In this document: positions 17,932 through 63,785 of the stretch, one piece after another
Layout: every line of letters begins with the position of its first letter
How positions within the stretch are numbered: the stretch's first letter is position 1
IMG/VR virus record: IMGVR_UViG_3300028829_003504
Span: 197,789-261,788 of that record
DNA: 64,000 bases
Reading direction: 5' to 3' (one strand)
The notes under the pieces: model-generated
The model's database searches: none
The model's input: the letters and a program-made list of their open reading frames with translations, nothing else
Told to the model about the DNA's origin: nothing
Translations under genes and position numbers: made by a program

Positions 17932-18414
17932 ATGAAACAATTTGATACCAACCCCGACCGTCTTAGACGGCAACAGGCTGTTATGTCTCACTTAAAATTC
18001 TATCGTGGTGAGCTAGATGGTATTTGGGGACCGGCTTCTATTAGTGCTAAGAAAGCATTTGAGGTCAGTGGGTCATTCACTGGTGGGCTTCCTAACCAAG
18101 GACTTCCATTTAATCCGAATGCCCAACTGCCCTCAATACTTTATCGTGACCCACAGACAGGACTTGTTTGTCATCCTGAACTAAGTGACGAGAAACTAAC
18201 AGAGATGTTCCGCAGCCGTGGCAATGTTAGTGTAACTAAAGTGTCGGAAACTCAAGTATCTAATGATACTAAGAAAGTTGAACAACCGCATGTGCCTACG
18301 CAGCAGGAACCTCAGCGACAAGAGAACCGTAAGCAGGAACCTCAGCGACAAGAGAACCGTAAGCAGGAACCTCAGCGACAAGAGAAGCTTAAGCAGAAAC
18401 ATCGCCAAGGATAG
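17932..18414 (+). CDS. peptidoglycan-binding-domain protein with C-terminal charged repeats
   Basis: LKFYRGELDGIWGPASISA matches the PGBD DGxxGPxT motif; QEPQRQENRK repeats. Confidence 0.6.
   Translation: MKQFDTNPDRLRRQQAVMSHLKFYRGELDGIWGPASISAKKAFEVSGSFTGGLPNQGLPFNPNAQLPSILYRDPQTGLVCHPELSDEKLTEMFRSRGNVSVTKVSETQVSNDTKKVEQPHVPTQQEPQRQENRKQEPQRQENRKQEPQRQEKLKQKHRQG
18302..18386 (+). repeat. 30-bp coding tandem repeat, about 2.8 copies
   Basis: AGCAGGAACCTCAGCGACAAGAGAACCGTA x2 plus a partial third copy. Confidence 0.95.
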
Positions 18415-34539: not shown

Positions 34540-37500
34540 ATGATGGCAGATGAACAGTTAAAGAGTTTCATTTCGAACTACTTGTATTTATCAGATCTAC
34601 GTAATGTAGACAAGACTAATCCACTAACTTTCGAACTTGAACCAGATCACAGAACATTTTTGATGGTAAGTTCTTATGACGAACCTACTTTTTCGCAATT
34701 ACCTTACAACGTATTATGGCTTGTGTGTGACCCAGAAGACCCTTGGTATAATACAGTATATCGTCGTACTAATCATACTAACGCTGATGGTAGAAAGAGT
34801 ACGTGGGAAGAAATCACTACCTTTGATATGCTTTACGTAGTAGACCAATACTATCAAGCAATTAGTGATGCTGACCCATTTGAATTAGGTATTGAAGGTG
34901 AGTTCTCTTTAGGGCCTGCCTCAACTCTGAAAGCAGGTCTTATATTGATACCTGAAGTCCAAGGCGGCGACCCTGTTGTTGTTACTTTTGACTACCCTGG
35001 ATTTTTAGGCGCCCGCACACCTAAAGAGCATACACATCCTGATAAGCCACGGACTATGGTACACATCGACGGAGAATACTCTATCGATGAAAACTATCCT
35101 GACTCTGTAGGCGATACAGACACCTTCGTTTCATTTGATTACTCTCAGCTTCCAGAAGAAGGTTCCGTGTTCTTCTTAACTGGGAATAACCCTGATCGTA
35201 CGAACGAATGGTTCGGTGAGTGGCGTCTTCCCACAGAAGATGATGTAACGTACTTCATTCCTACTCTCATAGCTGTTGATGCGAGGCTAGCCTCAGGTGC
35301 AGTTGAGCTGGGTGATAACGCTACAGGTCAAGTAGAGGCCGACGGCGTATTCGATGATAACACTAGGGATATCAATCCTTCTGACATTGTTTGGACAATT
35401 GAAAATAACGCAGAAGGTATTACTATTGATCAGAGCGGTGTAATTACTATTCCTGACATAAGTTCTGATACTACTATAACCGTTAACGCTAAACTTGAGG
35501 ATAAGTACCATCCTGGGACTTTCGTTAATGGACTCTTAGTTATCAATGTTAAAGACCTATTTACCCCAGTGGTTCCACAATCACTTGCAATCATAGGTAA
35601 CGAGACGCAACCTGAGCAAACTACAGGCAGCTACGTGTTCCGTGTGACGTACTCCGATGGAGCAACTTCGGATATAACACCAGATACCGCTAGTAGCTCA
35701 GCACCTATTGCCACATTTGGTATTAACGGTGACTTAACTGCAATGGACATTACTAATGACACCCCTACAGTTTTAAGTGCGTCATCAGCTATCGAAGGTA
35801 TTATACTTAGTGCCTCATTACCTGTTACCATACTGGCGGAAGTAATTCCAGTTAGTTTGACCATCACAGGTCTTGCTACTGTACAGGAAGAAGGCACTTA
35901 CACCTACGATTTCGTCGTTTCTTACTCTGATGGAACTACTCAGGATATATCTATGGTAGACGGCGCTACTTCTAGTGACGTTACATCAGGTATATTTAAT
36001 ACGGATGGTGAATTAACTACTTTAGACATAGTTAATGATACGTCTATTGTCCTAGAAGCCTCATTTGCAGTTGACGGTATTCTACTTGATGCTTCACTAA
36101 CTGTTAATATTGTTGCCGACTCAATTCCTTCGAGCATAGAGATTATAGGAGCCAGTAGCATTGACGAAGGTGAAACCGAATCTTATACATTCCAAGTTAC
36201 TTATTCGGATAGCACAACTCGAATGTTAGATTTAGAGGACCTGGACTCATTCATTTCGGACAGTGTTGATTTGGTAGTCGCAGGTTCAGTTGCCTCAGTA
36301 GGTGATATTAATGCAAATGGTTCAGCCATACTGACTGTTAGTTATACGGAGTTAGGCCATACTATTACAGATACTCACAACGTTACTTTGGTAGCAGACC
36401 CCGTCCCTCAGTCATTAGTTATACTAGGAGCCAGTAGTATTAGAGAAGGTGAAACCGAATCTTATACGTACCAAGTTACTATGACAGATGGAAGTACCAA
36501 AATGGTTACTGTATCTGATTTAGCCTCTGATAATGCGGACTTGACAGTAGTAGGCGATGATGCCACAGTAGGTTCAATACTAGCTGATGGTGCCGCTGAA
36601 CTATCCGCATCTTACACGGAAGATGGCATTACGGTTAACGCTACGCACCCTGTAGGTTTAATTGCTGCCTCAGCCCCTCAGTCATTAGCCATACTAGGAG
36701 CCAGTAGTATTGACGAAGGTGAGACCGAATCTTATACATTCCAAGTTACCTATTCAGATGGAACTACGTCATTGGTTACAGTCTCGGACTTCGCCTCTGA
36801 TAATGTAGACTTAGTTATTACGGATTCTGACGCCACTGTAGGTTCAATACTGGTTAACGGTTCAGCTGGCCTAACTGCTTCTTATACGGAAGACGGTGTT
36901 ACAGTCAGTGCATCCTTACCTGTGGATTTAGTAGCTGCGCCTGCACCTCAATCTCTGGAGATTCTAGGTTCTTCGACATCGATTGAGTCTGGTGTAGAGC
37001 TATATACGTTTAAGTTAACTTATTCAGATGGAACTACGTCTTTAGTTGATGTAACGGACTTCGCCTCTGATAATGTGGACGTTTCTATATCAGGTAATAA
37101 TACGGCGACTGTGGGTTCTATTACTTCTGACGGATCGGCTATTCTATCTGCTTCTTACACGGAAGACGGTGTCACTGTTAGCGACACTCATGAATTGACC
37201 TACGTGGCTAATGCGGCTCCTACGTCCCTTAAGATCATAGGTGCAGACACTATACAGGAAGGTGACCAAGAAACGTTTACGTTTGAAGTTACATACTCTG
37301 ATGGTTCTACTTCATTAGTCTCAGTGGCTGACTTTTCTTCTGATGGAGCTGCAGGCGTAGTCTCAGATAACAGTGTGGTTACTGGTGGTGATATTGACGC
37401 AGATACTTCGGTGGTACTCTCTGCTTCTTATGAGGAGGATGGGGTCTCTGTTACGGACACACACAACCTTAATATTGAAGCATTACCTGTACCTACAAGT

Positions 37501-38994
37501 ATGGAGATATTGGGCACAGACTCTATAAATGAGAATGACTCCAGTACGTATACTTTCCAAGTTACAATGAGTGACTCAACTACTAAAATGGTTACGGTTA
37601 CTGATTTTGCTTCGGACGATGTATCTAAAGCTACGGTATTAAATAACACTACTGTTAATACAATGGACATTTCATCTGACACCACAGTATCCGTATCCGC
37701 TTCGTATGAAGAAGAAGGAACCACTGTTAGTGCTAGTAAGACAATTAACATTGTTGCTGATGTAGTACCTACCTCGATTGAAATTACAGGTCCTATTAGT
37801 GTGGATGAGGAGTCTATAACTTCTTATACGTTCCAAGTTACAATGAGTGACTCAACTACCAAAACGGTTACGGCCAGTACGGCAAGTGCCGACACAGGTG
37901 CCTTCTCAACGGCAGGTAGTTTTACTGCACCTACTGTTACCGGTCCTAGTAGTGTTGTCCTTTCCGCTTCTTACACGGAAGGCGATGTTACTGTAGATGA
38001 CACACATGTAGTTAGTATAGGAAACACACTGAACCCATTAATCAGTATTTCGTTATCAGGTCTAGCTCAGTTGGATGAAGGAGGTAACACTACACCTCTG
38101 ACTGTAACGGCAACATTTGAAGACTCCACTACGTCTGTCGTAACAGGTTCTTCTGACTACGTGATTTTATCTGGAGGTACTTACGGATCTATATCAGATA
38201 ACATTGTTACCTCAGGTAACGTGACAGAAAACTCGAACATGGTGTTAGAAGCAACTTATACTATAGGTGGGGTTACTAAGACGGCCGAACACACTATATC
38301 AATTAGAGCTGTAGCGCCTATTCCTGTTAGCGTTGAGATATCAGGGCCTTCTGAGGTAGATGAAGGTCAGACTGGTAGTTTAATTGCTGTGGTAACTTAC
38401 GATGATAACTCTACTGCGGCAGTAACTACTTCGGGTACCTGGTCATTTGCAGGTCCATCCGAAGGAGCTAGCGTGGATTCCAGCGGTATATTTTCTGCTC
38501 CTGCTGACGTAGGAAATGATACATCGGTTACTGTTAGTTTTACGTACACTGAGAACGGCACCACACTAGATGATAGTCACTCTATACTAGTTAAAGATAT
38601 TCCAGTTAGTGGACTTTCTGCTGCTTGGGGTTATGACGAGTCAGGTGCTGATATTTGGCCATACACGCAAGCGTTTATAGAAGCTCTACCTAATAAGTTA
38701 GCTTCGCCTGTTATAGGTCAGACGTTGACGTTTGGTACTAGTGGACACACCTACTTGGCTATACCTGAATCGGAATTATCCCCAGGTAAAGCCTTGTGGT
38801 ACTATTGGAACGGAGGAACAAATCCTAGTATTTTGGGTGGAGCTACGTGGCCTCTTGTTGGGTTCTTGGGCTCCAATAAACCTGCTATCATTAGCATTGC
38901 TGGCGAGAACTGGCATATCTATCGTTCTGACTTCGCGGGCGTACTTGGACCTGATACTTACGCCTTTTTTGAAGACAATATGCCATCATTCTAA
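34540..38994 (+). CDS. large Ig-like-repeat virion protein (fibre/appendage)
   Basis: About 12 repeats of ~90 aa (PxSLxIxGxxxIxEGxTxSYTFQVTYSDG); acidic, Ser/Thr-rich. Confidence 0.8.
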   Translation: MMADEQLKSFISNYLYLSDLRNVDKTNPLTFELEPDHRTFLMVSSYDEPTFSQLPYNVLWLVCDPEDPWYNTVYRRTNHTNADGRKSTWEEITTFDMLYVVDQYYQAISDADPFELGIEGEFSLGPASTLKAGLILIPEVQGGDPVVVTFDYPGFLGARTPKEHTHPDKPRTMVHIDGEYSIDENYPDSVGDTDTFVSFDYSQLPEEGSVFFLTGNNPDRTNEWFGEWRLPTEDDVTYFIPTLIAVDARLASGAVELGDNATGQVEADGVFDDNTRDINPSDIVWTIENNAEGITIDQSGVITIPDISSDTTITVNAKLEDKYHPGTFVNGLLVINVKDLFTPVVPQSLAIIGNETQPEQTTGSYVFRVTYSDGATSDITPDTASSSAPIATFGINGDLTAMDITNDTPTVLSASSAIEGIILSASLPVTILAEVIPVSLTITGLATVQEEGTYTYDFVVSYSDGTTQDISMVDGATSSDVTSGIFNTDGELTTLDIVNDTSIVLEASFAVDGILLDASLTVNIVADSIPSSIEIIGASSIDEGETESYTFQVTYSDSTTRMLDLEDLDSFISDSVDLVVAGSVASVGDINANGSAILTVSYTELGHTITDTHNVTLVADPVPQSLVILGASSIREGETESYTYQVTMTDGSTKMVTVSDLASDNADLTVVGDDATVGSILADGAAELSASYTEDGITVNATHPVGLIAASAPQSLAILGASSIDEGETESYTFQVTYSDGTTSLVTVSDFASDNVDLVITDSDATVGSILVNGSAGLTASYTEDGVTVSASLPVDLVAAPAPQSLEILGSSTSIESGVELYTFKLTYSDGTTSLVDVTDFASDNVDVSISGNNTATVGSITSDGSAILSASYTEDGVTVSDTHELTYVANAAPTSLKIIGADTIQEGDQETFTFEVTYSDGSTSLVSVADFSSDGAAGVVSDNSVVTGGDIDADTSVVLSASYEEDGVSVTDTHNLNIEALPVPTSMEILGTDSINENDSSTYTFQVTMSDSTTKMVTVTDFASDDVSKATVLNNTTVNTMDISSDTTVSVSASYEEEGTTVSASKTINIVADVVPTSIEITGPISVDEESITSYTFQVTMSDSTTKTVTASTASADTGAFSTAGSFTAPTVTGPSSVVLSASYTEGDVTVDDTHVVSIGNTLNPLISISLSGLAQLDEGGNTTPLTVTATFEDSTTSVVTGSSDYVILSGGTYGSISDNIVTSGNVTENSNMVLEATYTIGGVTKTAEHTISIRAVAPIPVSVEISGPSEVDEGQTGSLIAVVTYDDNSTAAVTTSGTWSFAGPSEGASVDSSGIFSAPADVGNDTSVTVSFTYTENGTTLDDSHSILVKDIPVSGLSAAWGYDESGADIWPYTQAFIEALPNKLASPVIGQTLTFGTSGHTYLAIPESELSPGKALWYYWNGGTNPSILGGATWPLVGFLGSNKPAIISIAGENWHIYRSDFAGVLGPDTYAFFEDNMPSF
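35575..38600 (+). repeat. degenerate ~270-290-bp tandem units encoding Ig-like domains
   Basis: Shared DNA blocks, e.g. ATACTAGGAGCCAGTAGTATT at 36421 and 36691, GTTACAATGAGTGACTCAACTAC twice. Confidence 0.8.
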
Positions 38995-39783: not shown

Positions 39784-40845
39784 ATGGGTATTAGTATTGA
39801 ACGTAATAACTTTGTAAGCTTACAGCTTATGTGGAAATCCATAGTAGACGCTATGGTATCAGGAGGCTTCGAAGTGGAACTAGCAGCCGATGCAACAGGA
39901 GGTGTACTTAATATAAGTAGTGCAGGGACGTCCTACTCCGATAGTACTGTGTTGTACGTCCTTAAACCTACTACTGATGTTGATGCTCTTGCTGATACCC
40001 AACCTTGGCGTATAGTGATTCGCATCGAGAATATATCTGACGAGGTGGCTAACTCTTATTCAGTTAACGTAGTAACGCCAACTCAGATAATGTATGTACC
40101 GGGGTCGTCATTTGCTATAGCAGCACCTGATGAAGACAAGGAGCAAGGCTTACTTAACGTGGACGGGGATTCTACGGATTATAATCGTAGTTTCTTCCAC
40201 AGAGAGCCTGGTTCTTCTACTTGGAGTTGTTTTCCCTCAGAAACAAATGTAGAAGCAGTACCTCTATCGTATCGTATATCCGTATCCGATCATGGTATTG
40301 TATTGTTTACTTGGGCGGAAGCGCAAGATAGAGCAGGCGATTGTTTTAACTGGTTCTGTATACAGAGAGCCGTAGATTCAGATGGTGTAGTTCTTGTAGA
40401 CGGCCATGCCCCTTTATGGTGCGTGTTCTCTCAGGATGGGGGAGGCGGCTCTAACCTTGATACAGTTGACGCTGAGGGTATACGTAAGTTTGTAGTACGT
40501 GAAGACGATGTAAACGCACCTACAGAATCGGTTAGCGCTGTTGTACCTACAGCCGATTCCAGCCCTATAATAAATCCTATCCAGCAGGTCGCTATTAGCG
40601 AGAGTAATAAGTATATGTTGAACTTTCCACAAGGAATAAATACTCAACGTTACGCATACCCGCACCAACTGGATATGATATGCTATACGTCCGCAGATGT
40701 AATATCGCAGTACAGTGAGCCTTCGCTCCTTATCTACGGTGAAACACAGCCGCGGACGTATAAGGCTATGAATGCCAACTTCAAGGATAACAAAGGCATG
40801 CGAATGCTTATGTTGATCGTGGGTTCAGGTATTTCTGCCACTTAG
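39784..40845 (+). CDS. putative structural protein, paralog family copy 1
   Basis: Shares SYRxxV..HGI, WFCIQR, PLxCVxSxxGGG, FVxRExD, GLNxxRYxYP, YxAMxAN...NxGMR with the 40936 and 54495 genes. Confidence 0.7.
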   Translation: MGISIERNNFVSLQLMWKSIVDAMVSGGFEVELAADATGGVLNISSAGTSYSDSTVLYVLKPTTDVDALADTQPWRIVIRIENISDEVANSYSVNVVTPTQIMYVPGSSFAIAAPDEDKEQGLLNVDGDSTDYNRSFFHREPGSSTWSCFPSETNVEAVPLSYRISVSDHGIVLFTWAEAQDRAGDCFNWFCIQRAVDSDGVVLVDGHAPLWCVFSQDGGGGSNLDTVDAEGIRKFVVREDDVNAPTESVSAVVPTADSSPIINPIQQVAISESNKYMLNFPQGINTQRYAYPHQLDMICYTSADVISQYSEPSLLIYGETQPRTYKAMNANFKDNKGMRMLMLIVGSGISAT

Positions 40846-40935: not shown

Positions 40936-42096
40936 ATGGCTACTATTGAAAAACGTAATCTGGTAGGAATGGAAGCAGTTGTCCAATCACTAGTGACAGA
41001 CTTGGCCGCTAATGGCTTTGAGATAATGAACGTGAACGACAATGATAGCAATTTAACTATTGACGGTGAGTCGAAGCGAATTTTAATGCGACCTACAACG
41101 GCAGTAGATCCTCTTGCTATTGAAGAGTCTGATTCGGGGAATGCGTCTTATGACTCTAGACAACCTTGGCGTTTAATGTTTGAAGTAGATAACGATGAAG
41201 GTGGCTTTCGTATTTGGGCTAATACACCTACAAACGTTATGGTTGATAGTGCTACTAAAGAAGTAACTATGTCTAAGAGCGTAAGCGTAGGTGATACAGA
41301 CTTCGCTACATCAGGTTTACTTACATATAAATCGTTAGACAAATCCGCGCAGAACACCAGAAAGGTTTTAGCGCCTGAAGGTGATTTAGCCTCAGCAGCT
41401 CAGAGTAAGTGCTACACAATGAACGTTGCTTATTGGGGAATCGATCTAACTAAAATAGATTACGAATCATTTCCTATGTCGTACCGTCTAACTGTTACGC
41501 CTCGAGGTATAATGGTAATGGTATGGGTAGAATCACGCGATAATCATGGTGCATCTTACGGTTGGTTCTGTATTCAACGTATGGTTGACGTTACAGGCGG
41601 AGCGGTATTGGACGGTAAAGCTCCTCTATTTTGTGTATTCTCTGAGAATGGTGGTGGTGGTGCTAGAGCTGATGGTACAGGAACTATAGCGTTAGACGGT
41701 ACTACCTATGACGCGTTAAACGCTCCTGAGCCTGATGGTATTAACCAGTTTGTTATACGTGAAGGCGATATAAATGCACCAGATATTCCGCACAGTGCGG
41801 TAATTGACACAGCAGATGCAACCCGTATTATTAACAGTACTCAGCAAGTAAGTACGTCGGAAGATAACCAGTTTATCCTTAATTTCGCAAAAGGTTTAAA
41901 TACTCAACGTTACTCTTACCCTCATGAGCTTGACCTATTCGCTTATACTTCTGCGGATGTTATTTCTCAATGGTCAGAAACTGAGGTAACCGTATACGGC
42001 GAATCTACACCACGTAAGTACAAAGCAATGAATGCCAACCACATTAACAACAAAGGTATGCGTATCTTAATGTTAGTAGAAGGCGGCGGCGTTTAA
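40936..42096 (+). CDS. putative structural protein, paralog family copy 2
   Basis: Same motifs; ATG 40936 after AGGAG. Confidence 0.7.
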   Translation: MATIEKRNLVGMEAVVQSLVTDLAANGFEIMNVNDNDSNLTIDGESKRILMRPTTAVDPLAIEESDSGNASYDSRQPWRLMFEVDNDEGGFRIWANTPTNVMVDSATKEVTMSKSVSVGDTDFATSGLLTYKSLDKSAQNTRKVLAPEGDLASAAQSKCYTMNVAYWGIDLTKIDYESFPMSYRLTVTPRGIMVMVWVESRDNHGASYGWFCIQRMVDVTGGAVLDGKAPLFCVFSENGGGGARADGTGTIALDGTTYDALNAPEPDGINQFVIREGDINAPDIPHSAVIDTADATRIINSTQQVSTSEDNQFILNFAKGLNTQRYSYPHELDLFAYTSADVISQWSETEVTVYGESTPRKYKAMNANHINNKGMRILMLVEGGGV

Positions 42097-46177: not shown

Positions 46178-47995
46178 ATGTTAAGCGAATCCGCTAAGTT
46201 TGAAAACTTAGACCAATTCAAATGGTACACCTATACAGGTCGTAATAAGAATCTGGTAGCAAGAAAGCATGAGAGACTATTAGTGAAAGGTGCCGTATAC
46301 GGCATGAAAGCCATTAGGGGTGATAAATTCTATATAGTCTTTCCTGAAGACTACCACATTGACTTTACGGTTACTAAGCGTGTAGGCCTTAATATATCTA
46401 AAAACTCTAAACTTAAGCGTAAGCCACCTCCACTGACTAATAACAAGGGAGAGGGAGGTCGTGCTTCTCGCACACTAGGGCCTAAAGGCCTTGGTAGAGT
46501 CCAAAAGGCCCAAGAGAAGTCTAAGTGGGATGCTACTTACTTCAAGCCGCAAGCTCGGGTAGGGGATGAATTGAAGAACGGTATAAGTTTCGAGAATTAC
46601 CAATGGCGTAATTTTACGGACATAACTCCCATTAGGAAGCGTAATGGTACCAAGGTTGTTCACTCATTCCCAAAGAAGTCTATTGTAGGTGTCCGCTTCT
46701 TACGTGATAGTAAAGGAGCTAAACTAGTTACTACTGATGGTAAAGTACTTACTATAAGTAAAGAGCAGTTTGATATGGTACTTAACGCATCGAAAGTAAT
46801 GCCTAAGAATAAATGGCCTGAAGGGACCATCTCTGTTGAAGAAATGGCTGAGAACCTTCAGTACGAAAAAGAATCGGACAAGGCCCGACGCATTTCTGAT
46901 AGAAACCTAGCCAGAGCCGATAACGAAGCAGCTAGGCGTGAAAAGAAGAATCAGGAGCGTAAGAAGAGACGGGAGGATCAAGAAGCCATTAGGTCCGAAC
47001 GCGAGAGATTGAAGCGAAGACTTGAGGGCCGTAAGAAAGAAGTCAATCTTACTATGAAACCTAAGACCAGTAAAGAGCTTGCGGATATATTAGTGCAGGG
47101 TAAAAAGCCTAAAGAGGACGAGGGCGTATTATCTGATATGGATCTGCAAGAGAATCTAGACGCCCTTAAGCAGATGGACTTGGATTCAGATGATACTCAG
47201 GACTACGATGACGAAGAGTCTGGAGGGGAAGGTGGTACTTCTAATGACTTCGATGATAGTGACCTGTCGGACGCAGATATGCCTGACCCTGAAAACCGTG
47301 ACTTCGATGATAACGAATCCGATAAACTTATGGACGACCTTGACGAATTAATCGAGCAGCGACACGAGCAGGCATTTAGTTTAGGTGACCTTGACGGCGA
47401 AGACGAAGAGGAAGACCTTGACGAAGAGGAAGACCTTGACGAAGAGGAAGACCCGGACGAAGAGGAAGACCCGGACGACCTTGACGAAGAGGAAGACCCG
47501 GACGACCTTGACGAAGAGGAAGACCCGGACGACCTTGACGAAGAGGAAGACCTTGACGAAGAGGAAGACCCGGACGACCTTGACGAAGAGGAAGACCCGG
47601 ACGAAGAGGAAGACCCGGACGTCGCTATTGCTGAGGAGGAGCTAGGAGAAGAAGGAGAAGAGGAAGACCTGGACGAAGAAGGTGACTCTAATCCTAAAGA
47701 CTATGTATCAGAAGAAGGTGACGTGGTTTTATTCCTAAGTGATGATAGCGATAAACGTGAGTACGTACTACTTGACATATTCCCACTACCTGCAAACAAT
47801 AACATCACTGTGTATAAGGTGTACGATGTAACCAACAAGCCTGACGTGTTCAATACTGTCCGTGTAGCAAAAGGCTCTCGTAATAAGTTTGAGAATATGG
47901 TTAAGTTCCTGCGCAAAATGAATCCAAAAGAATATAGTGGCTACTATACCTCAGCCGAACTTATGGATAGGTCTAAGAGTCCTATTAACAGCTAA
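46178..47995 (+). CDS. putative internal virion protein with basic N-half and acidic repeat region
   Basis: Starts MLSESA; DEEEDL/DEEEDP repeats. Confidence 0.65.
   Translation: MLSESAKFENLDQFKWYTYTGRNKNLVARKHERLLVKGAVYGMKAIRGDKFYIVFPEDYHIDFTVTKRVGLNISKNSKLKRKPPPLTNNKGEGGRASRTLGPKGLGRVQKAQEKSKWDATYFKPQARVGDELKNGISFENYQWRNFTDITPIRKRNGTKVVHSFPKKSIVGVRFLRDSKGAKLVTTDGKVLTISKEQFDMVLNASKVMPKNKWPEGTISVEEMAENLQYEKESDKARRISDRNLARADNEAARREKKNQERKKRREDQEAIRSERERLKRRLEGRKKEVNLTMKPKTSKELADILVQGKKPKEDEGVLSDMDLQENLDALKQMDLDSDDTQDYDDEESGGEGGTSNDFDDSDLSDADMPDPENRDFDDNESDKLMDDLDELIEQRHEQAFSLGDLDGEDEEEDLDEEEDLDEEEDPDEEEDPDDLDEEEDPDDLDEEEDPDDLDEEEDLDEEEDPDDLDEEEDPDEEEDPDVAIAEEELGEEGEEEDLDEEGDSNPKDYVSEEGDVVLFLSDDSDKREYVLLDIFPLPANNNITVYKVYDVTNKPDVFNTVRVAKGSRNKFENMVKFLRKMNPKEYSGYYTSAELMDRSKSPINS
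47402..47620 (+). repeat. coding tandem array of 18-bp units with 9-bp GACGACCTT inserts
   Basis: GACGAAGAGGAAGACC(TT/CG) about 12 times, encoding DEEEDL/P. Confidence 0.95.
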
Positions 47996-58380: not shown

Positions 58381-59039
58381 AACGACTAAATATTAATATT
58401 ACAACTACCGATGTTTTTCATCCAGTAGATAAGCTAGGTACCTTTGATAGATCACAACTACGTACCTTATTCCTACAACTTAATGCCGTTGCTTCCACTG
58501 CGGCAGATTGCGCTGAGCAATGCCAATCAATACCTAATGACTTAGTCGAACTGGGTTTAGATGATTTAGACGTATCGCCCCCGCACTTACGCAACTACTA
58601 CGAGCGAGTGGAGGCCGAAGCAGTTTCATTAAGTGACGCCGTGGCTAATCGCTTACAGGCTTCGGCCTCCACTGCTCACATGCAAGACGGTTTTGTGCGA
58701 CATCAGTTCTATAAAGCATTTGAAATAAGTAATAAGTTTGGATCTAATCAGTATAGTGGTATTAGATCTAGAGTACTTGACGCTATAGATAACCTACCTG
58801 TTACAGGTTTAGGGCACGACGACAGTACAGTAGAGGTAGCCTCATATAGTCCTTGTACACCAAGACCTGAACCTGCCCACGCTAAGTACTCGGCCTTGGT
58901 ATCTACTGCCGTTGTACTAGAAGCGTTCAATACGGCCTTACGTAAGTTTAAGGCCGTAGCGGTTGCTTCGCTGGACATGCCTTGCGATCAAGGTATTCAC
59001 GATGAAGCTAAAGCACTGTTGTACGGAGCTGAATTATAA
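58377..59039 (+). CDS. hypothetical (putative virion) protein
   Basis: TTG 58377 after AAGGAG, overlapping upstream TGA. Confidence 0.6.
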   Translation: MKRLNINITTTDVFHPVDKLGTFDRSQLRTLFLQLNAVASTAADCAEQCQSIPNDLVELGLDDLDVSPPHLRNYYERVEAEAVSLSDAVANRLQASASTAHMQDGFVRHQFYKAFEISNKFGSNQYSGIRSRVLDAIDNLPVTGLGHDDSTVEVASYSPCTPRPEPAHAKYSALVSTAVVLEAFNTALRKFKAVAVASLDMPCDQGIHDEAKALLYGAEL

Positions 59040-59827
59040 TGAAGTCAATTACTGTAGGCCGTCCTCAGCATAGATTCTCAAGTGAGGCCTTTGATGTAGG
59101 TTCATTGGCCCCTGCTACCGAAATGCTTGATGCTAGTAGAACATCGAAATCGATACAATTAAAGCCTGAAATTACTGGTGGCCAATCTGTTGACCTAGAC
59201 GTTAACGCTTGGCTTCCAATGGCCTCGGAAGTATATAACATAAGTCCTGATATTAGAGACTATGTTCTTGCTCCCATCCCAGCCATGATTACAGGTATGC
59301 CGAATACGAATGGTGACAGTGCGACGACAAGAGAAATGTTACGCTTTCAACCAGACCATGGTATGCCGAGCTACAAAACGTTTAAGGGTAAACCTACTCA
59401 CGTTGAGCATAACAATAAAGATTATACGATTGCTAAAGGTATTATCTTTGACAGTTACTTGCAACGTCTGCCTCAGTTTAAAGGCGACCACGCCAGATTA
59501 ACATTGCTATTAGGATTTGATCGCAGACGCGACCCAGATTTAGCAAATGCCATCGCAGCTAATAAAATAAACACATATAGCATAGGTATGTTCTTTAATT
59601 CCTATCGCTGCTCTATATGTAGTCATGTAGTGCAGCAAGGTACGATGCACATGTGTAGTCATACCCGACCACGCAGACCGACTTACTTGCATGATAGCGG
59701 TGTTCTTTCTTACCGAGAATGTCAGAATATAGTTGGCTTTGAATGTAGTTCTGTAGGAGACCCTGCCTATGTATCAGCCCATCATAACCCCGACCAGGTC
59801 ATAAACGTCCAAGACTTTAGGAATTAA
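59039..59827 (+). CDS. putative prohead (maturation) serine protease, HK97 gp4/assemblin-like
   Basis: NTNGD, FKGKPTHVEHN (His), YSIG (Ser), FECSSVGDPA; CSIC...CSH Zn insert. Confidence 0.7.
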   Translation: MKSITVGRPQHRFSSEAFDVGSLAPATEMLDASRTSKSIQLKPEITGGQSVDLDVNAWLPMASEVYNISPDIRDYVLAPIPAMITGMPNTNGDSATTREMLRFQPDHGMPSYKTFKGKPTHVEHNNKDYTIAKGIIFDSYLQRLPQFKGDHARLTLLLGFDRRRDPDLANAIAANKINTYSIGMFFNSYRCSICSHVVQQGTMHMCSHTRPRRPTYLHDSGVLSYRECQNIVGFECSSVGDPAYVSAHHNPDQVINVQDFRN

Positions 59828-59829
59828 TC

Positions 59830-60138
59830 ATGGCAGAAATATTTGCAAAGAAACAGGAAAGCGAGAGTGCCAATGTAGGCGGTAAACGTGTAGAGAAAGC
59901 AATCACAAAACTGTTCAACGACAACGGAGGTAACGGGGAAGACTTAATGTTTGACCTAGCCGACTATTTCATAGTTGACGCACCCTTCAATGAACTTAAA
60001 CGCTTGAAGACCACTCTGTTAGGCCGAGTAGCTTTAGGTCTTATCTTGAAAGAAGAATTCTACAACGATGAACTTCTTGAAGACCAGCCTCGAGCACGGC
60101 GTACAGCCCTAGCTGAACTGGGTTTCCCAAGAGGTTAA
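59830..60138 (+). CDS. small putative head protein (QESESAN)
   Basis: 102 aa; N-terminal SESA. Confidence 0.65.
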   Translation: MAEIFAKKQESESANVGGKRVEKAITKLFNDNGGNGEDLMFDLADYFIVDAPFNELKRLKTTLLGRVALGLILKEEFYNDELLEDQPRARRTALAELGFPRG

Positions 60139-60139
60139 T

Positions 60140-60381
60140 ATACAAATATTCATAAGTGAGTCAGCCTCTGTGGAATCTCTGATAAAGCAGAAGGCCAATA
60201 AAGCAATAAAGCAGTTGTTGAAGAAGAACCAATTTGAGGTTCTAAATGACAATGACGTTAGCATTGACGTAACTGATTATCCTCAAATGACTTCTACGTA
60301 GGCGTTGATGGACTAAGCTTCACGGTGAAAGTTAAAGTACGTAAGCCTATGGAGATGCCCAAACGAACTGTAAACTTATAG
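60140..60381 (+). pseudogene. disrupted small gene of the IFISESA family (ATA in start position, -1 shift near 60287)
   Basis: IQIFISESASVESLIKQK...PQMTST* (60140-60301); -1 frame continues NDFYVGVDGLSFTVKVKVRK...VNL* to 60381. Confidence 0.5.
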
Positions 60382-60546
60382 TATAGCCAAATCTTAAACG
60401 TTCGTATTGTATATCATACGAACATTGAAGGAGGTGGGCCCACGTCTCCCAGACTACTACCTCTGGGTAATAAAAATGTAGTAGAGCGATGTCTCGGCCC
60501 TCCTAATAAGAGGGCTTCCTTAATTAAATTGGAGTGGTATGTGAAC
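60371..60546 (+). repeat. structured intergenic element, long copy
   Basis: Collinear with 60944-61027 apart from two insertions (12 nt and about 80 nt) and a few substitutions. Confidence 0.85.
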
Positions 60547-60581
60547 CCACCCATCATAATCCAAAACTTTAGGAATTAACT

Positions 60582-60959
60582 ATGAAAGTTATATTAGTAA
60601 GCCAGTCATCCGTTAAAATGGAAAACAACGCTATCGTCATATTCGGCAGACGCGGTAAGAAGATTGCAGAAGAACTGAAGGCAGTAGCTGACTTAAGTAA
60701 GAAAGTTAAAGGCTCAGTTCCTATGATGGATACTGACATAATGAAAGTAGTAGGACTTCTGCAGGTAAGCAAACAGAAAATTGCAGAGATACCTGCGGAT
60801 AACTTAAAAACATTACGTGACTACGGCCCTAAATTGCTTTCCTACTGCAAGATGTATAAGAAATTAAATGCAGCCTCTTATGAACGTGACGATTGGTTAA
60901 AAAGTGCAGGTAAGAGTAAATCGCAAATAGGCAATATAAGCACTAAACTTAGAGTATAG
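60582..60959 (+). CDS. small protein (MKVILVSQSS)
   Basis: 125 aa, AGGA RBS. Confidence 0.75.
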   Translation: MKVILVSQSSVKMENNAIVIFGRRGKKIAEELKAVADLSKKVKGSVPMMDTDIMKVVGLLQVSKQKIAEIPADNLKTLRDYGPKLLSYCKMYKKLNAASYERDDWLKSAGKSKSQIGNISTKLRV

Positions 60960-61027
60960 CCAAATCTTAAACGTTCGTACGGACATTGAAGGATGGCTTC
61001 CTTAATTAAATTGGAGTGGTATGTGAA
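60944..61027 (+). repeat. structured intergenic element, short copy
   Basis: TAAACTTAGAGTATAGCCAAATCTTAAACGTTCGTACGGACATTGAAGGATGGCTTCCTTAATTAAATTGGAGTGGTATGTGAA. Confidence 0.85.
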
Positions 61028-61034
61028 ACCTATT

Positions 61035-61478
61035 ATGATAGCACTTAGCGCAGGGTTGCACTTTGATGATTTTGTACGCGGGTCATTCAAAGCAGAAACA
61101 ATAGAAAAAGAAGGCAGTGCATTAGTCTTCACCACCACTCTAGTCGGCAAGGCAACTAAAGCCCCTGACTATAAGAAGAACCAGCTTATACGGAACTTCT
61201 TAATTAAACTAGGTGAGTGGACTCAAGCCCATCTAGATGAATTACATTCACAGGGTATTAAAGAAATACGAGTATCACCTATAGTAGAAGACCTTATGGG
61301 TAGACTACGAAGAACATCAGGTAGCTCTAGATTCTACTTGAACAGCAAAGAGACTTCGTTTCATATTGTTGTTGGTAAAAACTACTTATTACTATCTGTT
61401 CCTGAGAAGAAAGTCAGCACGATTGACAACAAGGCACAGCTAGCCAATCTACGTAACATATTAAAGGGTAACACCTAA
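61035..61478 (+). CDS. small protein (MIALSAG)
   Basis: ATG 61035 preferred because the 60993 start lies inside the repeat element. Confidence 0.6.
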   Translation: MIALSAGLHFDDFVRGSFKAETIEKEGSALVFTTTLVGKATKAPDYKKNQLIRNFLIKLGEWTQAHLDELHSQGIKEIRVSPIVEDLMGRLRRTSGSSRFYLNSKETSFHIVVGKNYLLLSVPEKKVSTIDNKAQLANLRNILKGNT

Positions 61479-61819
61479 TGAAAATCTTTATAAGTCAAAG
61501 CGGTACTGGTACTCCTAAGAACATAGCTAAACTTTTAACAGGCCGTGAAGCGGAGCAGATTACACAAGCATTGAAAGTAGTTAAGAAGGACTTAGCCCTT
61601 ACCTTTACTCAAAGGGGTACTCCTAACGTATACGTACCTAATCGTGACGTTCAGAGTTTAGAGCAAGACTTTTTGATTGAAATCTTCGAAACCGAAAATA
61701 GACATAAGAATCTGGGTTTGATGACCGACTCTAAAGATAGAAACATATTCTACATAGTAGATGCCGATACTGACGAAGCCTCGCCTCGTAGGTTAGGCGC
61801 TCTATTCACTAAGGCTTAG
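61478..61819 (+). CDS. small protein (MKIFISQSG)
   Basis: 113 aa, TAATG coupled. Confidence 0.75.
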   Translation: MKIFISQSGTGTPKNIAKLLTGREAEQITQALKVVKKDLALTFTQRGTPNVYVPNRDVQSLEQDFLIEIFETENRHKNLGLMTDSKDRNIFYIVDADTDEASPRRLGALFTKA

Positions 61820-61827
61820 GAGCTATC

Positions 61828-62844
61828 ATGAAGAAAGTAGAATTTCTAAGGTTCCAGTGGTACGTATACTTACAATCTAAGCCCGTCGCACTGAATGACA
61901 TACATGGTACTGACGGAGAAGAATACGACATTGATGTAGACCGTAAAGAGAAGTTTGGATTACACTTCGACGGTAAGAAGTATTGGTTCATGATGGACGA
62001 CCCTCTAGATGTAGCCTTTGAGATAGATAAGCATAACGCTGAACTGCTAACAAAGAACAGTCGTGGCTTTACAGGCAAGATTGGAGGCAAGGTAGTTGTT
62101 AAAGGAGGTGACTTTGCCTCTCTTGATAAGAAGCCTAATGGTACTGGTCCTGCTAGAGGAGACTCTGACAAAGGTCCTAAACGCTCTGGTGTAGGTGTTA
62201 CTAAAGTGATTAGTTACGTACAGAAATCCCTTAATGCACGACCTAAGCCTAAGCAAGTTAAGATTAGTTTACGTGCCGTTGAAGAAGACGTTAAGTTCAC
62301 TTTCGGTTTATCACACCCACCTAGCCAAGCTATATGGGATATGGTTAAAGAAGCTGAACCTTACCTAGGGTTAAAGATTAAAATCAATACTGACGTGGTT
62401 CTTATTTGTGAAAGCGAGAAAGTACCTACTGCATTGATAACTACCTTTAGTAAGAAGCTCGGTCGTAAAGCAATCTACATTAACTTGACGCCTAGTGAGT
62501 TAGCATCTATCAGTCATACAGGTAGAGTTGACCCCGCCCAGTGTGCAGCAGCCATTACCCATGAGCTTGCCCATTACGTGTATCACGAGGCTATTCGCAA
62601 TTCAGATCTAAGGAAGTGGAAACTTGAAGTGGCTGCGTTGAAATTTCACGCAGACCAATATAACCACGGTCAAGGTTATCCCTGGCATGATGAACACTTT
62701 GCGATGCTTTGTGAGCATATGGTCCATGGCCATTCAGCCCGTAGGTTAAATTCTACAATAGGATTAGGTATTGCGGAAAAGTACTTCGATAATGTCTTTT
62801 TGAAAGGCGATGAAAACAGTAAACTATATCCACCTAAGAAGTAA
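61828..62844 (+). CDS. putative Zn metallopeptidase (HExxH) with N-terminal beta domain
   Basis: AITHELAHYV, downstream DEHFA; AGGAG RBS. Confidence 0.7.
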   Translation: MKKVEFLRFQWYVYLQSKPVALNDIHGTDGEEYDIDVDRKEKFGLHFDGKKYWFMMDDPLDVAFEIDKHNAELLTKNSRGFTGKIGGKVVVKGGDFASLDKKPNGTGPARGDSDKGPKRSGVGVTKVISYVQKSLNARPKPKQVKISLRAVEEDVKFTFGLSHPPSQAIWDMVKEAEPYLGLKIKINTDVVLICESEKVPTALITTFSKKLGRKAIYINLTPSELASISHTGRVDPAQCAAAITHELAHYVYHEAIRNSDLRKWKLEVAALKFHADQYNHGQGYPWHDEHFAMLCEHMVHGHSARRLNSTIGLGIAEKYFDNVFLKGDENSKLYPPKK

Positions 62845-62859: not shown

Positions 62860-62942
62860 CAACTAGTTAGGGACAGGGCCGGCCAGCCTTTCAAAGAACC
62901 CTTTATTCTGAGATTACCTACTAGTTGTTTTCTATAAAGGGT
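62860..62942 (+). promoter_or_regulatory. RBS-sequestering leader structure
   Basis: ACCCTTTAT 62898-62906 / ATAAAGGGT 62934-62942 covers the AAGGG RBS; CAACTAGT 62860-62867 / ACTAGTTG 62920-62927 is a crossing helix. Confidence 0.5.
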
Positions 62943-62948
62943 AGAACT

Positions 62949-63785
62949 ATGTCAAAATCAAATAGACTACAAGAATTCAATTCTTGGCTGGTCTCTAAAC
63001 CGAACATCACTATCGTAGGTGATATCCCCAATAAAGCTTGGACTAAGGTGACTCTGACCTGTTCAGACCATGCGTTTACTTGGAGTACAAGTCCCGGTAA
63101 CATAAGACCTGATCGTATAGGCTGTAAGCACTGCGCCTCGAATAAATTCATAAAGCCTTTCTGGACTAAATACAATTCACTAGAACACCTACGCATAATT
63201 AAAGGGGTGCCTTTAAAGGGCTCTGATTCAATTACGTTCCACTGCACTAAGCACGAACATGTTTGGGACATGACAGTACAATCATTTGCTAGGTGGAAAC
63301 ACGGATGTAAGCTCTGTGCCCAAGAAGCTAGTATATCGTCATCTAACGGTTATACTAATTGGAAATCAGTTAGACTGGGCGACACCTGTGTTAAAGTTCA
63401 CGGGTACGAAGACCACGCCATTCGCTATGTGCTAAGTAAGAACATTAAAGCCAATGACCTTCTAGTTCACGGTTCTCATAAAGTACCTACTATTCGCTAC
63501 AACGGCAATAGAAACTATTTCCCGGACTTGTTTATACCTAGTATGAATCGCATAGTTGAAGTTAAATCTTTGTATACTCTAGGCTTCAACCTTAGGGCGA
63601 CTACTGAGGATTCTATATTTAGAGGTAAAAGACGATTCGACAATCTTTTACAGAAACGTCTAGCAGTTCGCCAATCTGGCTTTAAGTTTAAGCTATTGGT
63701 TTTTAACAACGCAGGAGCGTTAATAGGGCTACCTAAGAAATGGTGGACTTATTCATACTCTGACCTTAAACAAACATTTACATAG
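62949..63785 (+). CDS. putative homing endonuclease: two Zn-finger repeats plus PD-(D/E)xK nuclease
   Basis: CxxH...W...GCxxC x2; YFPDLFIPSMNRIVEVKS. Confidence 0.65.
   Translation: MSKSNRLQEFNSWLVSKPNITIVGDIPNKAWTKVTLTCSDHAFTWSTSPGNIRPDRIGCKHCASNKFIKPFWTKYNSLEHLRIIKGVPLKGSDSITFHCTKHEHVWDMTVQSFARWKHGCKLCAQEASISSSNGYTNWKSVRLGDTCVKVHGYEDHAIRYVLSKNIKANDLLVHGSHKVPTIRYNGNRNYFPDLFIPSMNRIVEVKSLYTLGFNLRATTEDSIFRGKRRFDNLLQKRLAVRQSGFKFKLLVFNNAGALIGLPKKWWTYSYSDLKQTFT

What the first reader, a model, noticed from the sequence alone, without database searches (positions are those of the whole stretch)
60433..60515. H-type pseudoknot within the long-copy insertion
Seen: CCCAGA-CTACTAC-C-TCTGGG-TAATAAAAAT-GTAGTAG gives stem 1 CCCAGA/TCTGGG (6 bp) and stem 2 CTACTAC/GTAGTAG (7 bp) with a 10-nt A-rich loop 3. 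It is flanked by the palindrome GTGGGCCCAC and the hairpin GCCCTC-CTAATAA-GAGGGC. Established: compact pseudoknots with A-rich minor-groove loops occur in preQ1-I riboswitches, pistol ribozymes and frameshift signals. This one lacks the exact consensus of those families as I recall them. A QueE-like gene in the window makes a preQ-type ligand worth testing.
Basis: partly seen in the sequence, partly recalled or inferred. Interest (0 to 1): 0.6.

Follow-up and report, generated by a model that had tools for sequence, protein, structure and literature searches.

The report
Conserved pseudoknot leader RNA, jumbo phages
The flagged stretch is part of a roughly 100-base folded RNA element, conserved just upstream of a gene start in a small group of marine jumbo phages; it matches no described RNA family, is not a preQ1 riboswitch, and its function is unknown.

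Summary
The letters are as described (core 60448-60484). Alone they prove little. The 262-kb phage genome holds 54 interleaved perfect 6+7-bp stem pairs within 60 nt, against 39±7 in simulations. Folding z-scores are -1.4 and -1.1. The 7-bp stem 2 leaves no loop 1.

Comparison rescues part of the finding. The "insertion" is a conserved element of about 100 nt. It occurs once per genome in related marine jumbo-phage contigs (head protease 56-88% identical).
- Stem 1 covaries: 3 of 6 pairs have compensatory changes.
- The GCCCTC hairpin covaries: 4 of 6 pairs.
- Stem 2 survives only as an invariant ACUAC/GUAG(U) of 4-5 bp, sterically sound but untested by covariation.
- The palindrome is not conserved.
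- GGAGGUG (Shine-Dalgarno-like) pairs with C(R)UCUCC in 8 of 8 sequences.

The element always ends 21-29 nt before a start codon.

The long copy is ancestral. The short copy is a deletion derivative, left when a gene cassette (60582-60959) entered by recombination.

No Rfam family matches. The preQ1 specificity cytosine is not conserved. The genome has no QueE, QueC or radical-SAM gene.

Best reading: a new cis-acting, pseudoknot-containing leader RNA. Its mechanism is only inferred.

The parts
60390..60398 (+). Conserved unpaired motif AAUCUUARA at the 5' edge of the unit. It is also present in short copy B at 60963-60971.
   Evidence: Present in 7 of 8 homologs just before hairpin 0. Not used elsewhere in the genome in a comparable context.
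60400..60423 (+). Hairpin 0: GUUCGUA / UACGAAC, 7 bp with a 10-nt loop.
   Evidence: A hairpin of unrelated sequence sits at the same place in L005, L006, L009, L013, L015 and L016 (read by eye). Copy B keeps a shortened form at 60973-60984.
60430..60449 (+). Helix Pa: the Shine-Dalgarno-like GGAGGUG (60430-60436) paired with the anti-SD-like CGUCUCC (60443-60449). Its last two C overlap stem 1.
   Evidence: 7 pairs, 100% paired in 8 of 8 sequences. One-sided changes are U-A/U-G and G-C/G-U. G-U pairs fix the + strand.
60434..60443 (.). It spans the end of the Pa 5' strand, the Pa loop and the first base of the Pa 3' strand.
   Evidence: Not conserved in any homolog.
60448..60467 (+). Stem 1 of the pseudoknot: CCCAGA / UCUGGG with an 8-nt loop.
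   Evidence: 3 of 6 pairs show compensatory changes (A-U, U-A, C-G, G-C) and 95.7% of cells are paired. It also holds on the MAFFT-only alignment.
60456..60482 (+). Conserved stem 2 of the pseudoknot: ACUAC (60456-60460) with GUAGU (60478-60482). Loop 3 is 60468-60477 and A-rich.
   Evidence: 4 pairs are invariant in 8 of 8 and a fifth holds in 6 of 8, with no covariation. Resulting loops are L1 1-2 nt, L2 1 nt and L3 9-14 nt.
60483..60496 (+). Invariant block AGAGC-N3-GUCUCG, with a possible 3-bp helix P3: GAG 60484-60486 with CUC 60493-60495.
   Evidence: Invariant in the 7 main-type sequences, and the 3 pairs are kept in all 8. It cannot be tested by covariation.
60497..60515 (+). Hairpin P4: GCCCUC / GAGGGC with a 7-nt loop.
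   Evidence: 4 of 6 pairs show compensatory changes. L017 has a different 6-bp hairpin at the same place.
60516..60543 (+). Pyrimidine tail and A/U-rich spacer, real Shine-Dalgarno GGAG (60531-60534) and GTG start (60541).
   Evidence: P4 ends 21-29 nt before a start codon in all 8 instances (counted by eye).
60541..60579 (+). A 12-codon chimeric mini-ORF: the gene-Y N-terminus fused to the last codons of the protease gene. It stops 2 nt before the ATG of gene X.
   Evidence: (repeats D15, D18).
60582..60959 (+). Gene X (125 aa, no family assigned): the cassette flanked by the two repeat copies.
   Evidence: It is homologous to two ORFs that lie upstream of the element in L009.
60944..61030 (+). 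Short repeat copy B. It has the same flanks but lacks Pa through P4. It is followed by gene Y, whose likely true start is GTG 61023.
   Evidence: The GTG start and GGAG site are conserved in L005 and L006.
60143..60357 (+). Pseudogene remnant of the gene that precedes the element in L005.
   Evidence: tblastn: 65% identity over residues 3-54, then a frameshift, then residues 55-74. There is no start codon and the rest is missing.

Best explanation
The flagged bases belong to a conserved, structured, non-coding RNA element on the + strand. The core is about 100 nt (60426-60527), or about 135 nt with its upstream hairpin and AAUCUUARA motif. It forms the 5' leader of whatever ORF follows it in a subclade of marine jumbo phages.

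Its fold, from 5' to 3':
- A variable hairpin (hairpin 0).
- A hairpin (Pa) in which a near-perfect Shine-Dalgarno sequence is paired with an anti-SD-like strand.
- An H-type pseudoknot: stem 1 of 5-6 bp, stem 2 of 4-5 bp (ACUAC/GUAGU) and an A-rich loop 3.
- A small invariant block.
- A G+C-rich hairpin (P4).
- An A/U-rich spacer leading to the real ribosome-binding site.

Inferred, not shown: it acts in cis after transcription, as a compact folded cap that protects or processes the mRNA and sets the translation start of the downstream ORF. A protein or the 30S subunit may read it through the SD/anti-SD hairpin. Because it is conserved, it also serves as a recombination junction for gene cassettes. 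In this phage, gene X entered between the element and gene Y. That left a long copy with the element and a short copy from which it was deleted.
For: Shown:
- Conservation. blastn finds the element at 78% identity in L005, while the rest of the intergenic region does not align.
- Instances. Eight sequences score 60-111 bits against covariance model R1. L023 and L024 carry a near-identical L017-type copy.
- Copy number. There is one copy in the phage's own genome.
- Covariation. Three pairs in stem 1 and four in P4 have compensatory changes. Overall 96% of cells are paired, against 88.5% in shuffles (0 of 500 reach the observed value) and 38-49% in slid controls. The MAFFT-only alignment agrees.
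- Independent prediction. RNAalifold predicts Pa, stem 1, P3 and P4.
- Pa is paired in 8 of 8 sequences, and its G-U pairs are only possible on the + strand.
- The variable loop lengths are not multiples of three, so the element is not coding. Reading the L005 element by eye, all three frames are closed.
- Spacing to the next start codon is constant at 21-29 nt.
- The downstream gene differs between instances: gene Y family, another family in L009, and a mini-ORF in L017, L023, L016 and the window. This points to a general expression module rather than a gene-specific one.
- Ancestral order. L005 has the upstream gene, then the element, then gene Y. The window keeps a pseudogene of that upstream gene.
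- The assembly of both repeat copies is backed by Logan contigs of two runs of one sample that may be the source.
Against: - Stem 2 never varies, so the pseudoknot itself is not demonstrated.
- Only 8-9 distinct sequences are available. They are related, so shuffle statistics overstate significance.
- L015 breaks two stem-1 pairs and L005 breaks one.
- There are no RNA data. Only DNA runs from one sample hold the phage.
- Gene Y does without the element in this phage (copy B) and in L014, so the element is dispensable for that gene.
- Single-sequence folding shows no consistent exposure or masking of the downstream ribosome-binding site.
- The stability/translation mechanism rests only on analogy.
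Confidence: 0.45

Rival explanations
1. A riboswitch: the pseudoknot and invariant block form an aptamer for a small ligand (preQ1/preQ0 or another), and the SD/anti-SD hairpin acts as an expression platform.
For: - The H-type pseudoknot geometry, with an A-rich loop 3 over a G-C-rich stem 1, resembles preQ1-I and SAM-II (PMC11625349).
- About 36 invariant positions in about 100 nt.
- The two outer pairs of Pa and of stem 1 compete for the same two C.
Against: - No Rfam riboswitch model matches, even at E<=10.
- The preQ1 specificity C is not conserved.
- The downstream genes are unrelated, uncharacterised phage proteins or mini-ORFs rather than metabolic or transport genes.
- The genome has no queuosine-pathway genes.
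- The SD-like sequence has no start codon after it.
Confidence: 0.12
2. A self-cleaving ribozyme or other RNA-processing module that cuts the polycistronic late transcript between the variable cassette and the next gene.
For: - Many invariant unpaired nucleotides surround a pseudoknot.
- The intergenic position is independent of the identity of the downstream gene.
- From general knowledge, small ribozymes such as pistol, hatchet and twister-sister were found near phage genes.
Against: - No match to any Rfam ribozyme model.
- The architecture differs from pistol, where the 3' strand of the pseudoknot lies inside the P2/P3 internal loop.
Confidence: 0.1
3. A transcription-level element (nut/put-like processive antitermination site) or an independent small RNA gene. 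AAUCUUARA plus hairpin 0 would play a boxA/boxB-like role and P4 would be a 3' end.
For: - AAUCUUAAAC resembles the boxA consensus GCUCUUUAAC in 7 of 9 positions. This comparison is from memory and is only a lead.
- It is followed by a hairpin whose sequence varies but whose position is conserved.
Against: - No sigma-70-type promoter or intrinsic terminator is called at the element.
- P4 lacks a U-tract.
- The tight, constant spacing to a start codon favours an mRNA-leader role.
- L017 lacks the hairpin 0 arrangement.
Confidence: 0.1
4. No function: a chance fold inside a recombination scar or a selfish insertion.
For: - In the single sequence the pattern is at chance level and the fold energy is unremarkable.
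- The neighbourhood is a patchwork of recombined junctions.
Against: - The element is conserved at 78% where neighbouring intergenic DNA is unalignable.
- Seven pairs have compensatory changes.
- It is present in phages whose protease is only 56-64% identical.
- It is single-copy, with no other copies in the genome, so it is not a multicopy mobile repeat.
Confidence: 0.04

Closest known systems
preQ1-I riboswitch (Rfam RF00522)
   Same: A compact H-type pseudoknot: a 5-6-bp G-C-rich stem 1, a short stem 2 formed by the hairpin loop with a downstream strand, and an A-rich loop 3 able to line the minor groove of stem 1.
   Different: - No covariance-model match.
- The base before the 3' strand of stem 1 varies (C, A or G) instead of the conserved C of the UC/AC motif.
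- Stem 2 does not touch the real ribosome-binding site.
- The pseudoknot is embedded in a larger multi-helix element.
- There is no link to queuosine genes.
Pseudoknot in the phage T4 gene 32 mRNA leader and ribosomal-protein leader pseudoknots such as rpsO (from general knowledge)
   Same: A pseudoknot in a 5' leader, followed by an unstructured A/U-rich stretch and the translation start. These are read by a protein or the 30S subunit to set translation and mRNA life.
   Different: There is no sequence similarity. The downstream gene is not constant here, so autoregulation by its product is unlikely. Any binding partner is unknown.
PeSL cassettes of T4-type phages (PMC2839356, PMC4122927)
   Same: Conserved intergenic regulatory sequences containing a stem-loop flank small accessory ORFs and act as sites for recombinational insertion or deletion. 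In the window, gene X is flanked by two copies of the junction.
   Different: PeSLs are sigma-70 promoter plus terminator units repeated many times in a genome. Here no promoter is detected, the element is single-copy, and it is a far larger structured RNA.
STAB-SD mRNA stabiliser of Bacillus thuringiensis cryIIIA (from general knowledge; the term occurs in PMC5737220)
   Same: A near-perfect Shine-Dalgarno sequence far upstream of the start codon, with no start codon of its own.
   Different: STAB-SD works single-stranded by binding the 30S subunit. Here the SD-like sequence is paired in helix Pa in all homologs. It is unknown whether the host has a 5' exonuclease.
Pistol ribozyme (Rfam RF02679)
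   Same: A hairpin whose loop forms a pseudoknot with a downstream strand after an A-rich linker, in a phage-associated intergenic setting.
   Different: There is no covariance-model match. In pistol the 3' strand of the pseudoknot lies within the P2/P3 internal loop next to a conserved G-U cleavage site, and no such arrangement exists here.

Membership tests
preQ1-I riboswitch | Match to the Rfam covariance model at or near the gathering score | tested here: not met
   No hit at gathering in the whole window. No hit at E<=10 in 60300-60650 or in the L017 and L016 elements.
preQ1-I riboswitch | H-type pseudoknot with P1 of about 5 bp, a short P2 and an A-rich L3 | tested here: inconclusive
   Stem 1 covaries. 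Stem 2 is invariant, so it is consistent but unproven. L3 is 9-14 nt and A-rich.
preQ1-I riboswitch | A conserved UC or AC directly before the 3' strand of P1, whose C pairs with the ligand (PMC11625349) | tested here: not met
   Column 36 of alignment A4 reads C, A, A, A, C, G, G, G across the 8 sequences.
preQ1-I riboswitch | An expression platform (SD or terminator) overlapping the 3' strand of P2 | tested here: not met
   GUAGU lies 49 nt upstream of the real GGAG in the window (60482 against 60531). P3 and P4 lie between them.
preQ1-I riboswitch | Association with queuosine/preQ1 synthesis or transport genes | tested here: not met
   The downstream genes have no family. The genome has no QueC, Radical_SAM or QueE match.
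Pistol ribozyme | Rfam model match and self-cleavage at a conserved G-U | tested here: not met
   No covariance-model hit. Cleavage cannot be tested with these tools.
-1 programmed frameshift signal | A slippery X XXY YYZ heptamer 5-9 nt upstream of the pseudoknot, inside a translated ORF with an overlapping -1 frame | tested here: not met
   GGGCCCA exists only in the window and is changed in every homolog. All three frames are closed within the L005 element (read by eye). Upstream ORFs stop before the element in every instance, 32-70 nt before it where read.
PeSL-type recombination cassette | Repeated intergenic unit flanking an accessory ORF | tested here: met
   Copies at 60371-60548 and 60944-61030 flank gene X. 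Chimeric junctions are present.
PeSL-type recombination cassette | A sigma-70 early promoter plus terminator stem-loop, many copies per genome | tested here: not met
   No promoter or terminator is called there. The flank sequences occur only at these two places.
STAB-SD-like stabiliser | An accessible SD sequence without a start codon in the 5' UTR that binds the 30S subunit | tested here: inconclusive
   The SD-like UAAGGAGGUG is present with no start codon after it. It is predicted to be paired in Pa in 8 of 8 sequences. Binding cannot be tested.

The most novel reading that the evidence does not exclude
The element is the founding example of a new class of ligand-sensing or self-cleaving RNA specific to jumbo phages. 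Its pseudoknot and invariant AGAGC...GUCUCGG block would form an active site or binding pocket that gates an SD/anti-SD hairpin.
Probability: 0.2. Interest if true: 0.8.

Novelty: new variant of a known kind. Interest (0 to 1): 0.55.

Why it matters
Structured RNAs of jumbo phages are almost unexplored. This work gives a candidate new RNA family with a defined alignment, a covariance model (R1), covariation support for two helices and a testable pseudoknot. The family sits at a fixed distance from a translation start next to the head-maturation protease gene. If it controls mRNA life or translation, it would be a portable expression module of uncultured marine phages. If it binds a ligand or cleaves itself, it would be a new riboswitch or ribozyme class. 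The locus also shows how a conserved leader can serve as a recombination junction for gene cassettes, as PeSLs do in T4-type phages.

Tried and rejected
**Searches for further copies**
- An exact 20-mer of the core and a 31-mer of the flank found nothing in IMG/VR.
- The pattern GTCTCGGCCC..GGGCTTCC gave three unrelated G+C-rich chance hits, L010-L012.
- Two degenerate core patterns found nothing in IMG/VR or in GTDB genomes.
- blastn of the region and tblastn of gene Y against cultured phages found nothing.
- The metagenome scan with gene Y returned only the same phage, 100% identical (L004).
- Sequencing runs: only two DNA runs of one marine sample hold the phage, and no RNA run does. Their contigs confirm the assembly but show no variant.
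- The model hit in L048 (19 bits, E 0.025) looks like chance inside coding sequence.

**Structural alternatives**
- No tRNA or tmRNA is present.
- A closing helix between the SD-like sequence and the tail after P4 has only 62.5% of cells paired, no better than the slid controls.
- Single-sequence accessibility of the downstream ribosome-binding site showed no consistent pattern.

**Neighbouring proteins**
- Gene Y has no Pfam or PHROG family and no usable Atlas hit.
- Its AlphaFold model (pLDDT 81.8) has no significant fold match in the PDB or BFVD. Nothing therefore supports an RNA-binding autoregulator.
- The genes upstream of the element in relatives have no informative domains.

- One script call returned no answer and was repeated in simpler form.

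Full report
**Setting**

The window is the last 64 kb of a 261,788-bp IMG/VR virus record with direct terminal repeats, a jumbo phage from a marine metagenome. All genes around the finding are on the + strand. The ORF at 59039-59827 is a head maturation protease (phrog_18299, E 3e-95). The nearest cultured relatives are Phage NCTB and Erwinia phages Yoloswag and Y3, at only about 50% amino-acid identity.

**Observation check**

- Stem 1: CCCAGA 60448-60453 with TCTGGG 60462-60467.
- Stem 2: CTACTAC 60454-60460 with GTAGTAG 60478-60484.
- Loop 3: 60468-60477.
- Palindrome: 60434-60443.
- Hairpin GCCCTC/GAGGGC: 60497-60515.

The stretch is the extra material of repeat copy A (60371-60548) compared with copy B (60944-61030). 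The two copies flank ORF 60582-60959, called gene X here.

Taken alone, the pattern is not beyond chance:
- My scan found 54 interleaved perfect 6+7-bp stem pairs within 60 nt in the genome, against 39±7 in first-order Markov simulations. Within 40 nt there were 10 against 3.8±2.1.
- The minimum-free-energy fold of the region is a different, nested structure. Its z-score is -1.38 on the + strand and -1.06 on the - strand.
- As drawn, the pseudoknot has no loop-1 nucleotide to cross a 7-bp stem 2. By the established geometry of H-type pseudoknots this cannot form without breaking pairs.
- Rfam gives nothing at gathering thresholds over the window and nothing at E<=10 locally. No tRNA or tmRNA is present.

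**Relatives change the picture**

A word-index search with the protease returned homologs of 56-88% identity from metagenome assemblies. I fetched their contigs.

blastn showed that window 60428-60525 matches L005:7384-7483 at 78% identity. That is as well conserved as the neighbouring coding DNA, while the rest of the intergenic region does not align.

Reading the intergenic regions turned up the same element in L006 (identical in L007), L009, L013, L015, L016 and, in a more divergent form, L017. I built covariance model R1 from these sequences:
- It scores all eight at 60-111 bits.
- It finds a single copy in the phage's own genome.
- It finds a near-identical L017-type copy in two IMG/VR contigs, L023 and L024.
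- It finds nothing in relatives whose genes are tightly packed after the protease: L008, L014, L019, L021 and L022.
- It finds nothing in 38 more distant IMG/VR loci. A 39th, L048, gave only a 19-bit match that looks like chance.

**Structure supported by comparison**

I counted pairs on the model-based alignment A4 and on the model-free MAFFT alignment A3.
- **Stem 1.** Compensatory changes occur at 3 of 6 pairs on A4 and 2 on A3. Examples are CCCAGA/UCUGGG, CCCUGU/ACAGGG, CCCUGC/GCAGGG and, in L017, CGUGG/CCACG.
- **Hairpin P4 (GCCCUC/GAGGGC).** Compensatory changes occur at 4 of 6 pairs. L017 has an unrelated 6-bp hairpin at the same place.
- **Whole structure.** 96% of cells are paired, against 88.5% in shuffles (0 of 500 reach the observed value) and 38-49% when the partners are slid. 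With eight related sequences these controls are indicative, not probabilities.
- **Stem 2.** It is conserved only as ACUAC (60456-60460) with GUAG(U) (60478-60482). Four pairs are invariant and a fifth holds in 6 of 8. It never varies, so covariation neither supports nor refutes it.
They hold in only 3-4 of 8 sequences and would clash with P3.
- **Geometry with the conserved stem 2.** Loop 1 is 1-2 nt, loop 2 is 1 nt, and loop 3 is 9-14 nt and A-rich in every sequence. This is sterically sound.
- **Palindrome.** It is not conserved.
- **Helix Pa.** The invariant GGAGGUG, part of UAAGGAGGUG or GGAGGUGAUCC and complementary to the 3' end of 16S rRNA, pairs with C(R)UCUCC in 8 of 8 sequences. One-sided changes are U-A/U-G and G-C/G-U. 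Its G-U pairs would be mismatches on the other strand, so the RNA is the + strand.
- **Overlap of Pa and stem 1.** The two outer pairs of each compete for the same two C. RNAalifold prefers a 7-bp Pa with a 4-bp stem 1.
- **Closing helix.** One between the SD-like sequence and the tail after P4 is not supported.
- **Upstream of Pa.** Seven of the eight instances have AAUCUUARA followed by a hairpin of unrelated sequence. The motif is not used elsewhere in the genome in a comparable context.

**Context**

The element is non-coding. Its variable loop lengths are not multiples of three, and all three frames are closed in L005 when the sequence is read by eye.

P4 ends 21-29 nt before a start codon that has its own Shine-Dalgarno sequence, in all eight instances.

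The downstream ORF is not constant:
- A gene-Y homolog in L005, L006, L013 and L015.
- A different family in L009.
- A 13-codon ORF overlapping the gene-Y start in L016, read by eye from the sequence.
- A conserved 18-19-codon ORF followed by a strong hairpin in L017 and L023.
- In the window, a 12-codon chimeric mini-ORF (60541-60579) that stops 2 nt before gene X.

Gene Y has no Pfam, PHROG or Atlas relative. Its confident model (pLDDT 81.8) has no significant fold match.

**History of the locus**

- L005 shows the order protease, 173-aa gene, element, gene Y.
- The window keeps a start-less, frameshifted remnant of that 173-aa gene at 60143-60357. The element follows, then the first codons of gene Y fused to the last codons of a protease gene. 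After that come gene X, copy B without the element, and gene Y.
- Gene X is homologous to ORFs that lie upstream of the element in L009.
- The long copy is therefore ancestral. The short copy is a derivative in which the segment from Pa through P4 was lost between short GAGG direct repeats.
- The arrangement arose by recombination at conserved junctions, much as described for PeSL cassettes in T4-type phages (PMC2839356).
- Logan contigs of two runs of one sample that may be the source cover the region without differences. They break only at the 33-nt exact repeat, which has about double depth. This supports the assembly but is not independent evidence.

**Comparison with known families**

- **preQ1-I.** Membership fails on four tested features:
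  - There is no model match.
  - The conserved C before the 3' strand of P1 is absent (PMC11625349).
  - No expression platform overlaps stem 2.
- There is no queuosine context.
- **Weak Rfam hits.** The only ones are generic pseudoknot families at E>3 and one sRNA at E 0.24, all far below their gathering scores.
- **Pistol ribozyme and frameshift signals.** These also fail (see the membership table).
- **What it works like.** The element is a leader pseudoknot with an A-rich loop 3. Membership in any described family is not supported.

**Mechanism**

Shown:
- A conserved, + strand, non-coding, multi-helix RNA.
- A fixed distance from a translation start.
- Independence from the identity of the downstream gene.

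Inferred:
- It acts in cis as a leader module that protects or processes the mRNA and sets translation of the next ORF.
- It may be read by the 30S subunit or a protein through the SD/anti-SD hairpin.
- It also serves as a recombination junction.

I put 0.45 on this reading. The rivals are a riboswitch (0.12), a ribozyme or processing site (0.10), an antitermination site or small RNA (0.10) and no function (0.04). The remainder is unassigned.

**Limits**

- Only eight to nine distinct sequences were available.
- There are no RNA data.

Noticed in passing
window 60143-60357: Start-less, frameshifted remnant of the 173-aa gene that precedes the element in L005. Identity is 65% over residues 3-54, and a second frame covers residues 55-74.
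   Followed up: yes
window 60541-60579: A 12-codon mini-ORF (GTG start) that fuses the gene-Y N-terminus to the last codons of the protease gene. It ends 2 nt before the ATG of gene X, which suggests translational coupling.
   Followed up: partly
window 59830-62844 and loci L005-L021: Many small proteins downstream of the protease share an N-terminal motif of the type M..I.ISLS/N. It may be a capsid-targeting or propeptide signal, and it seems to act as a recombination junction at the DNA level.
   Followed up: no
L017:8757-8816 and L023:8284-8340: In the divergent L017 type, the element is followed by a conserved 18-19-codon ORF (MPGVYDS..C..GGGG.N). Next comes a strong hairpin GGGTGAGA/TCTCACCC with a pyrimidine-rich tail, and then the next gene.
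   Followed up: partly
window 35640-38010: Six or more tandem coding repeats of about 270-279 nt, probably Ig-like domains of a large structural protein.
   Followed up: no
window 47360-47692: A repeat array with a 9-nt period encoding an acidic D/E-rich tract (GACCTTGACGAAGAGGAAG units).
   Followed up: no
window 18302-18403: Three tandem copies of a 30-nt unit; the overlapping 42-nt repeat windows are 90-100% alike.
   Followed up: no
window 62925-63785: An ORF with weak HNH endonuclease (PHROG) and DUF7487 (Pfam) matches. Relatives carry a DUF7487 gene at the same relative position (L015).
   Followed up: no
whole genome G000: TTTACAGTTT occurs 16 times and CTTTTTTAGCTT up to 9 times. These are candidate phage promoter or terminator motifs and are unrelated to the element.
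   Followed up: no
window 40735-40814 and 41995-42074: Two 80-nt stretches, 71% identical and 1260 nt apart, which suggests adjacent paralogous genes.
   Followed up: no
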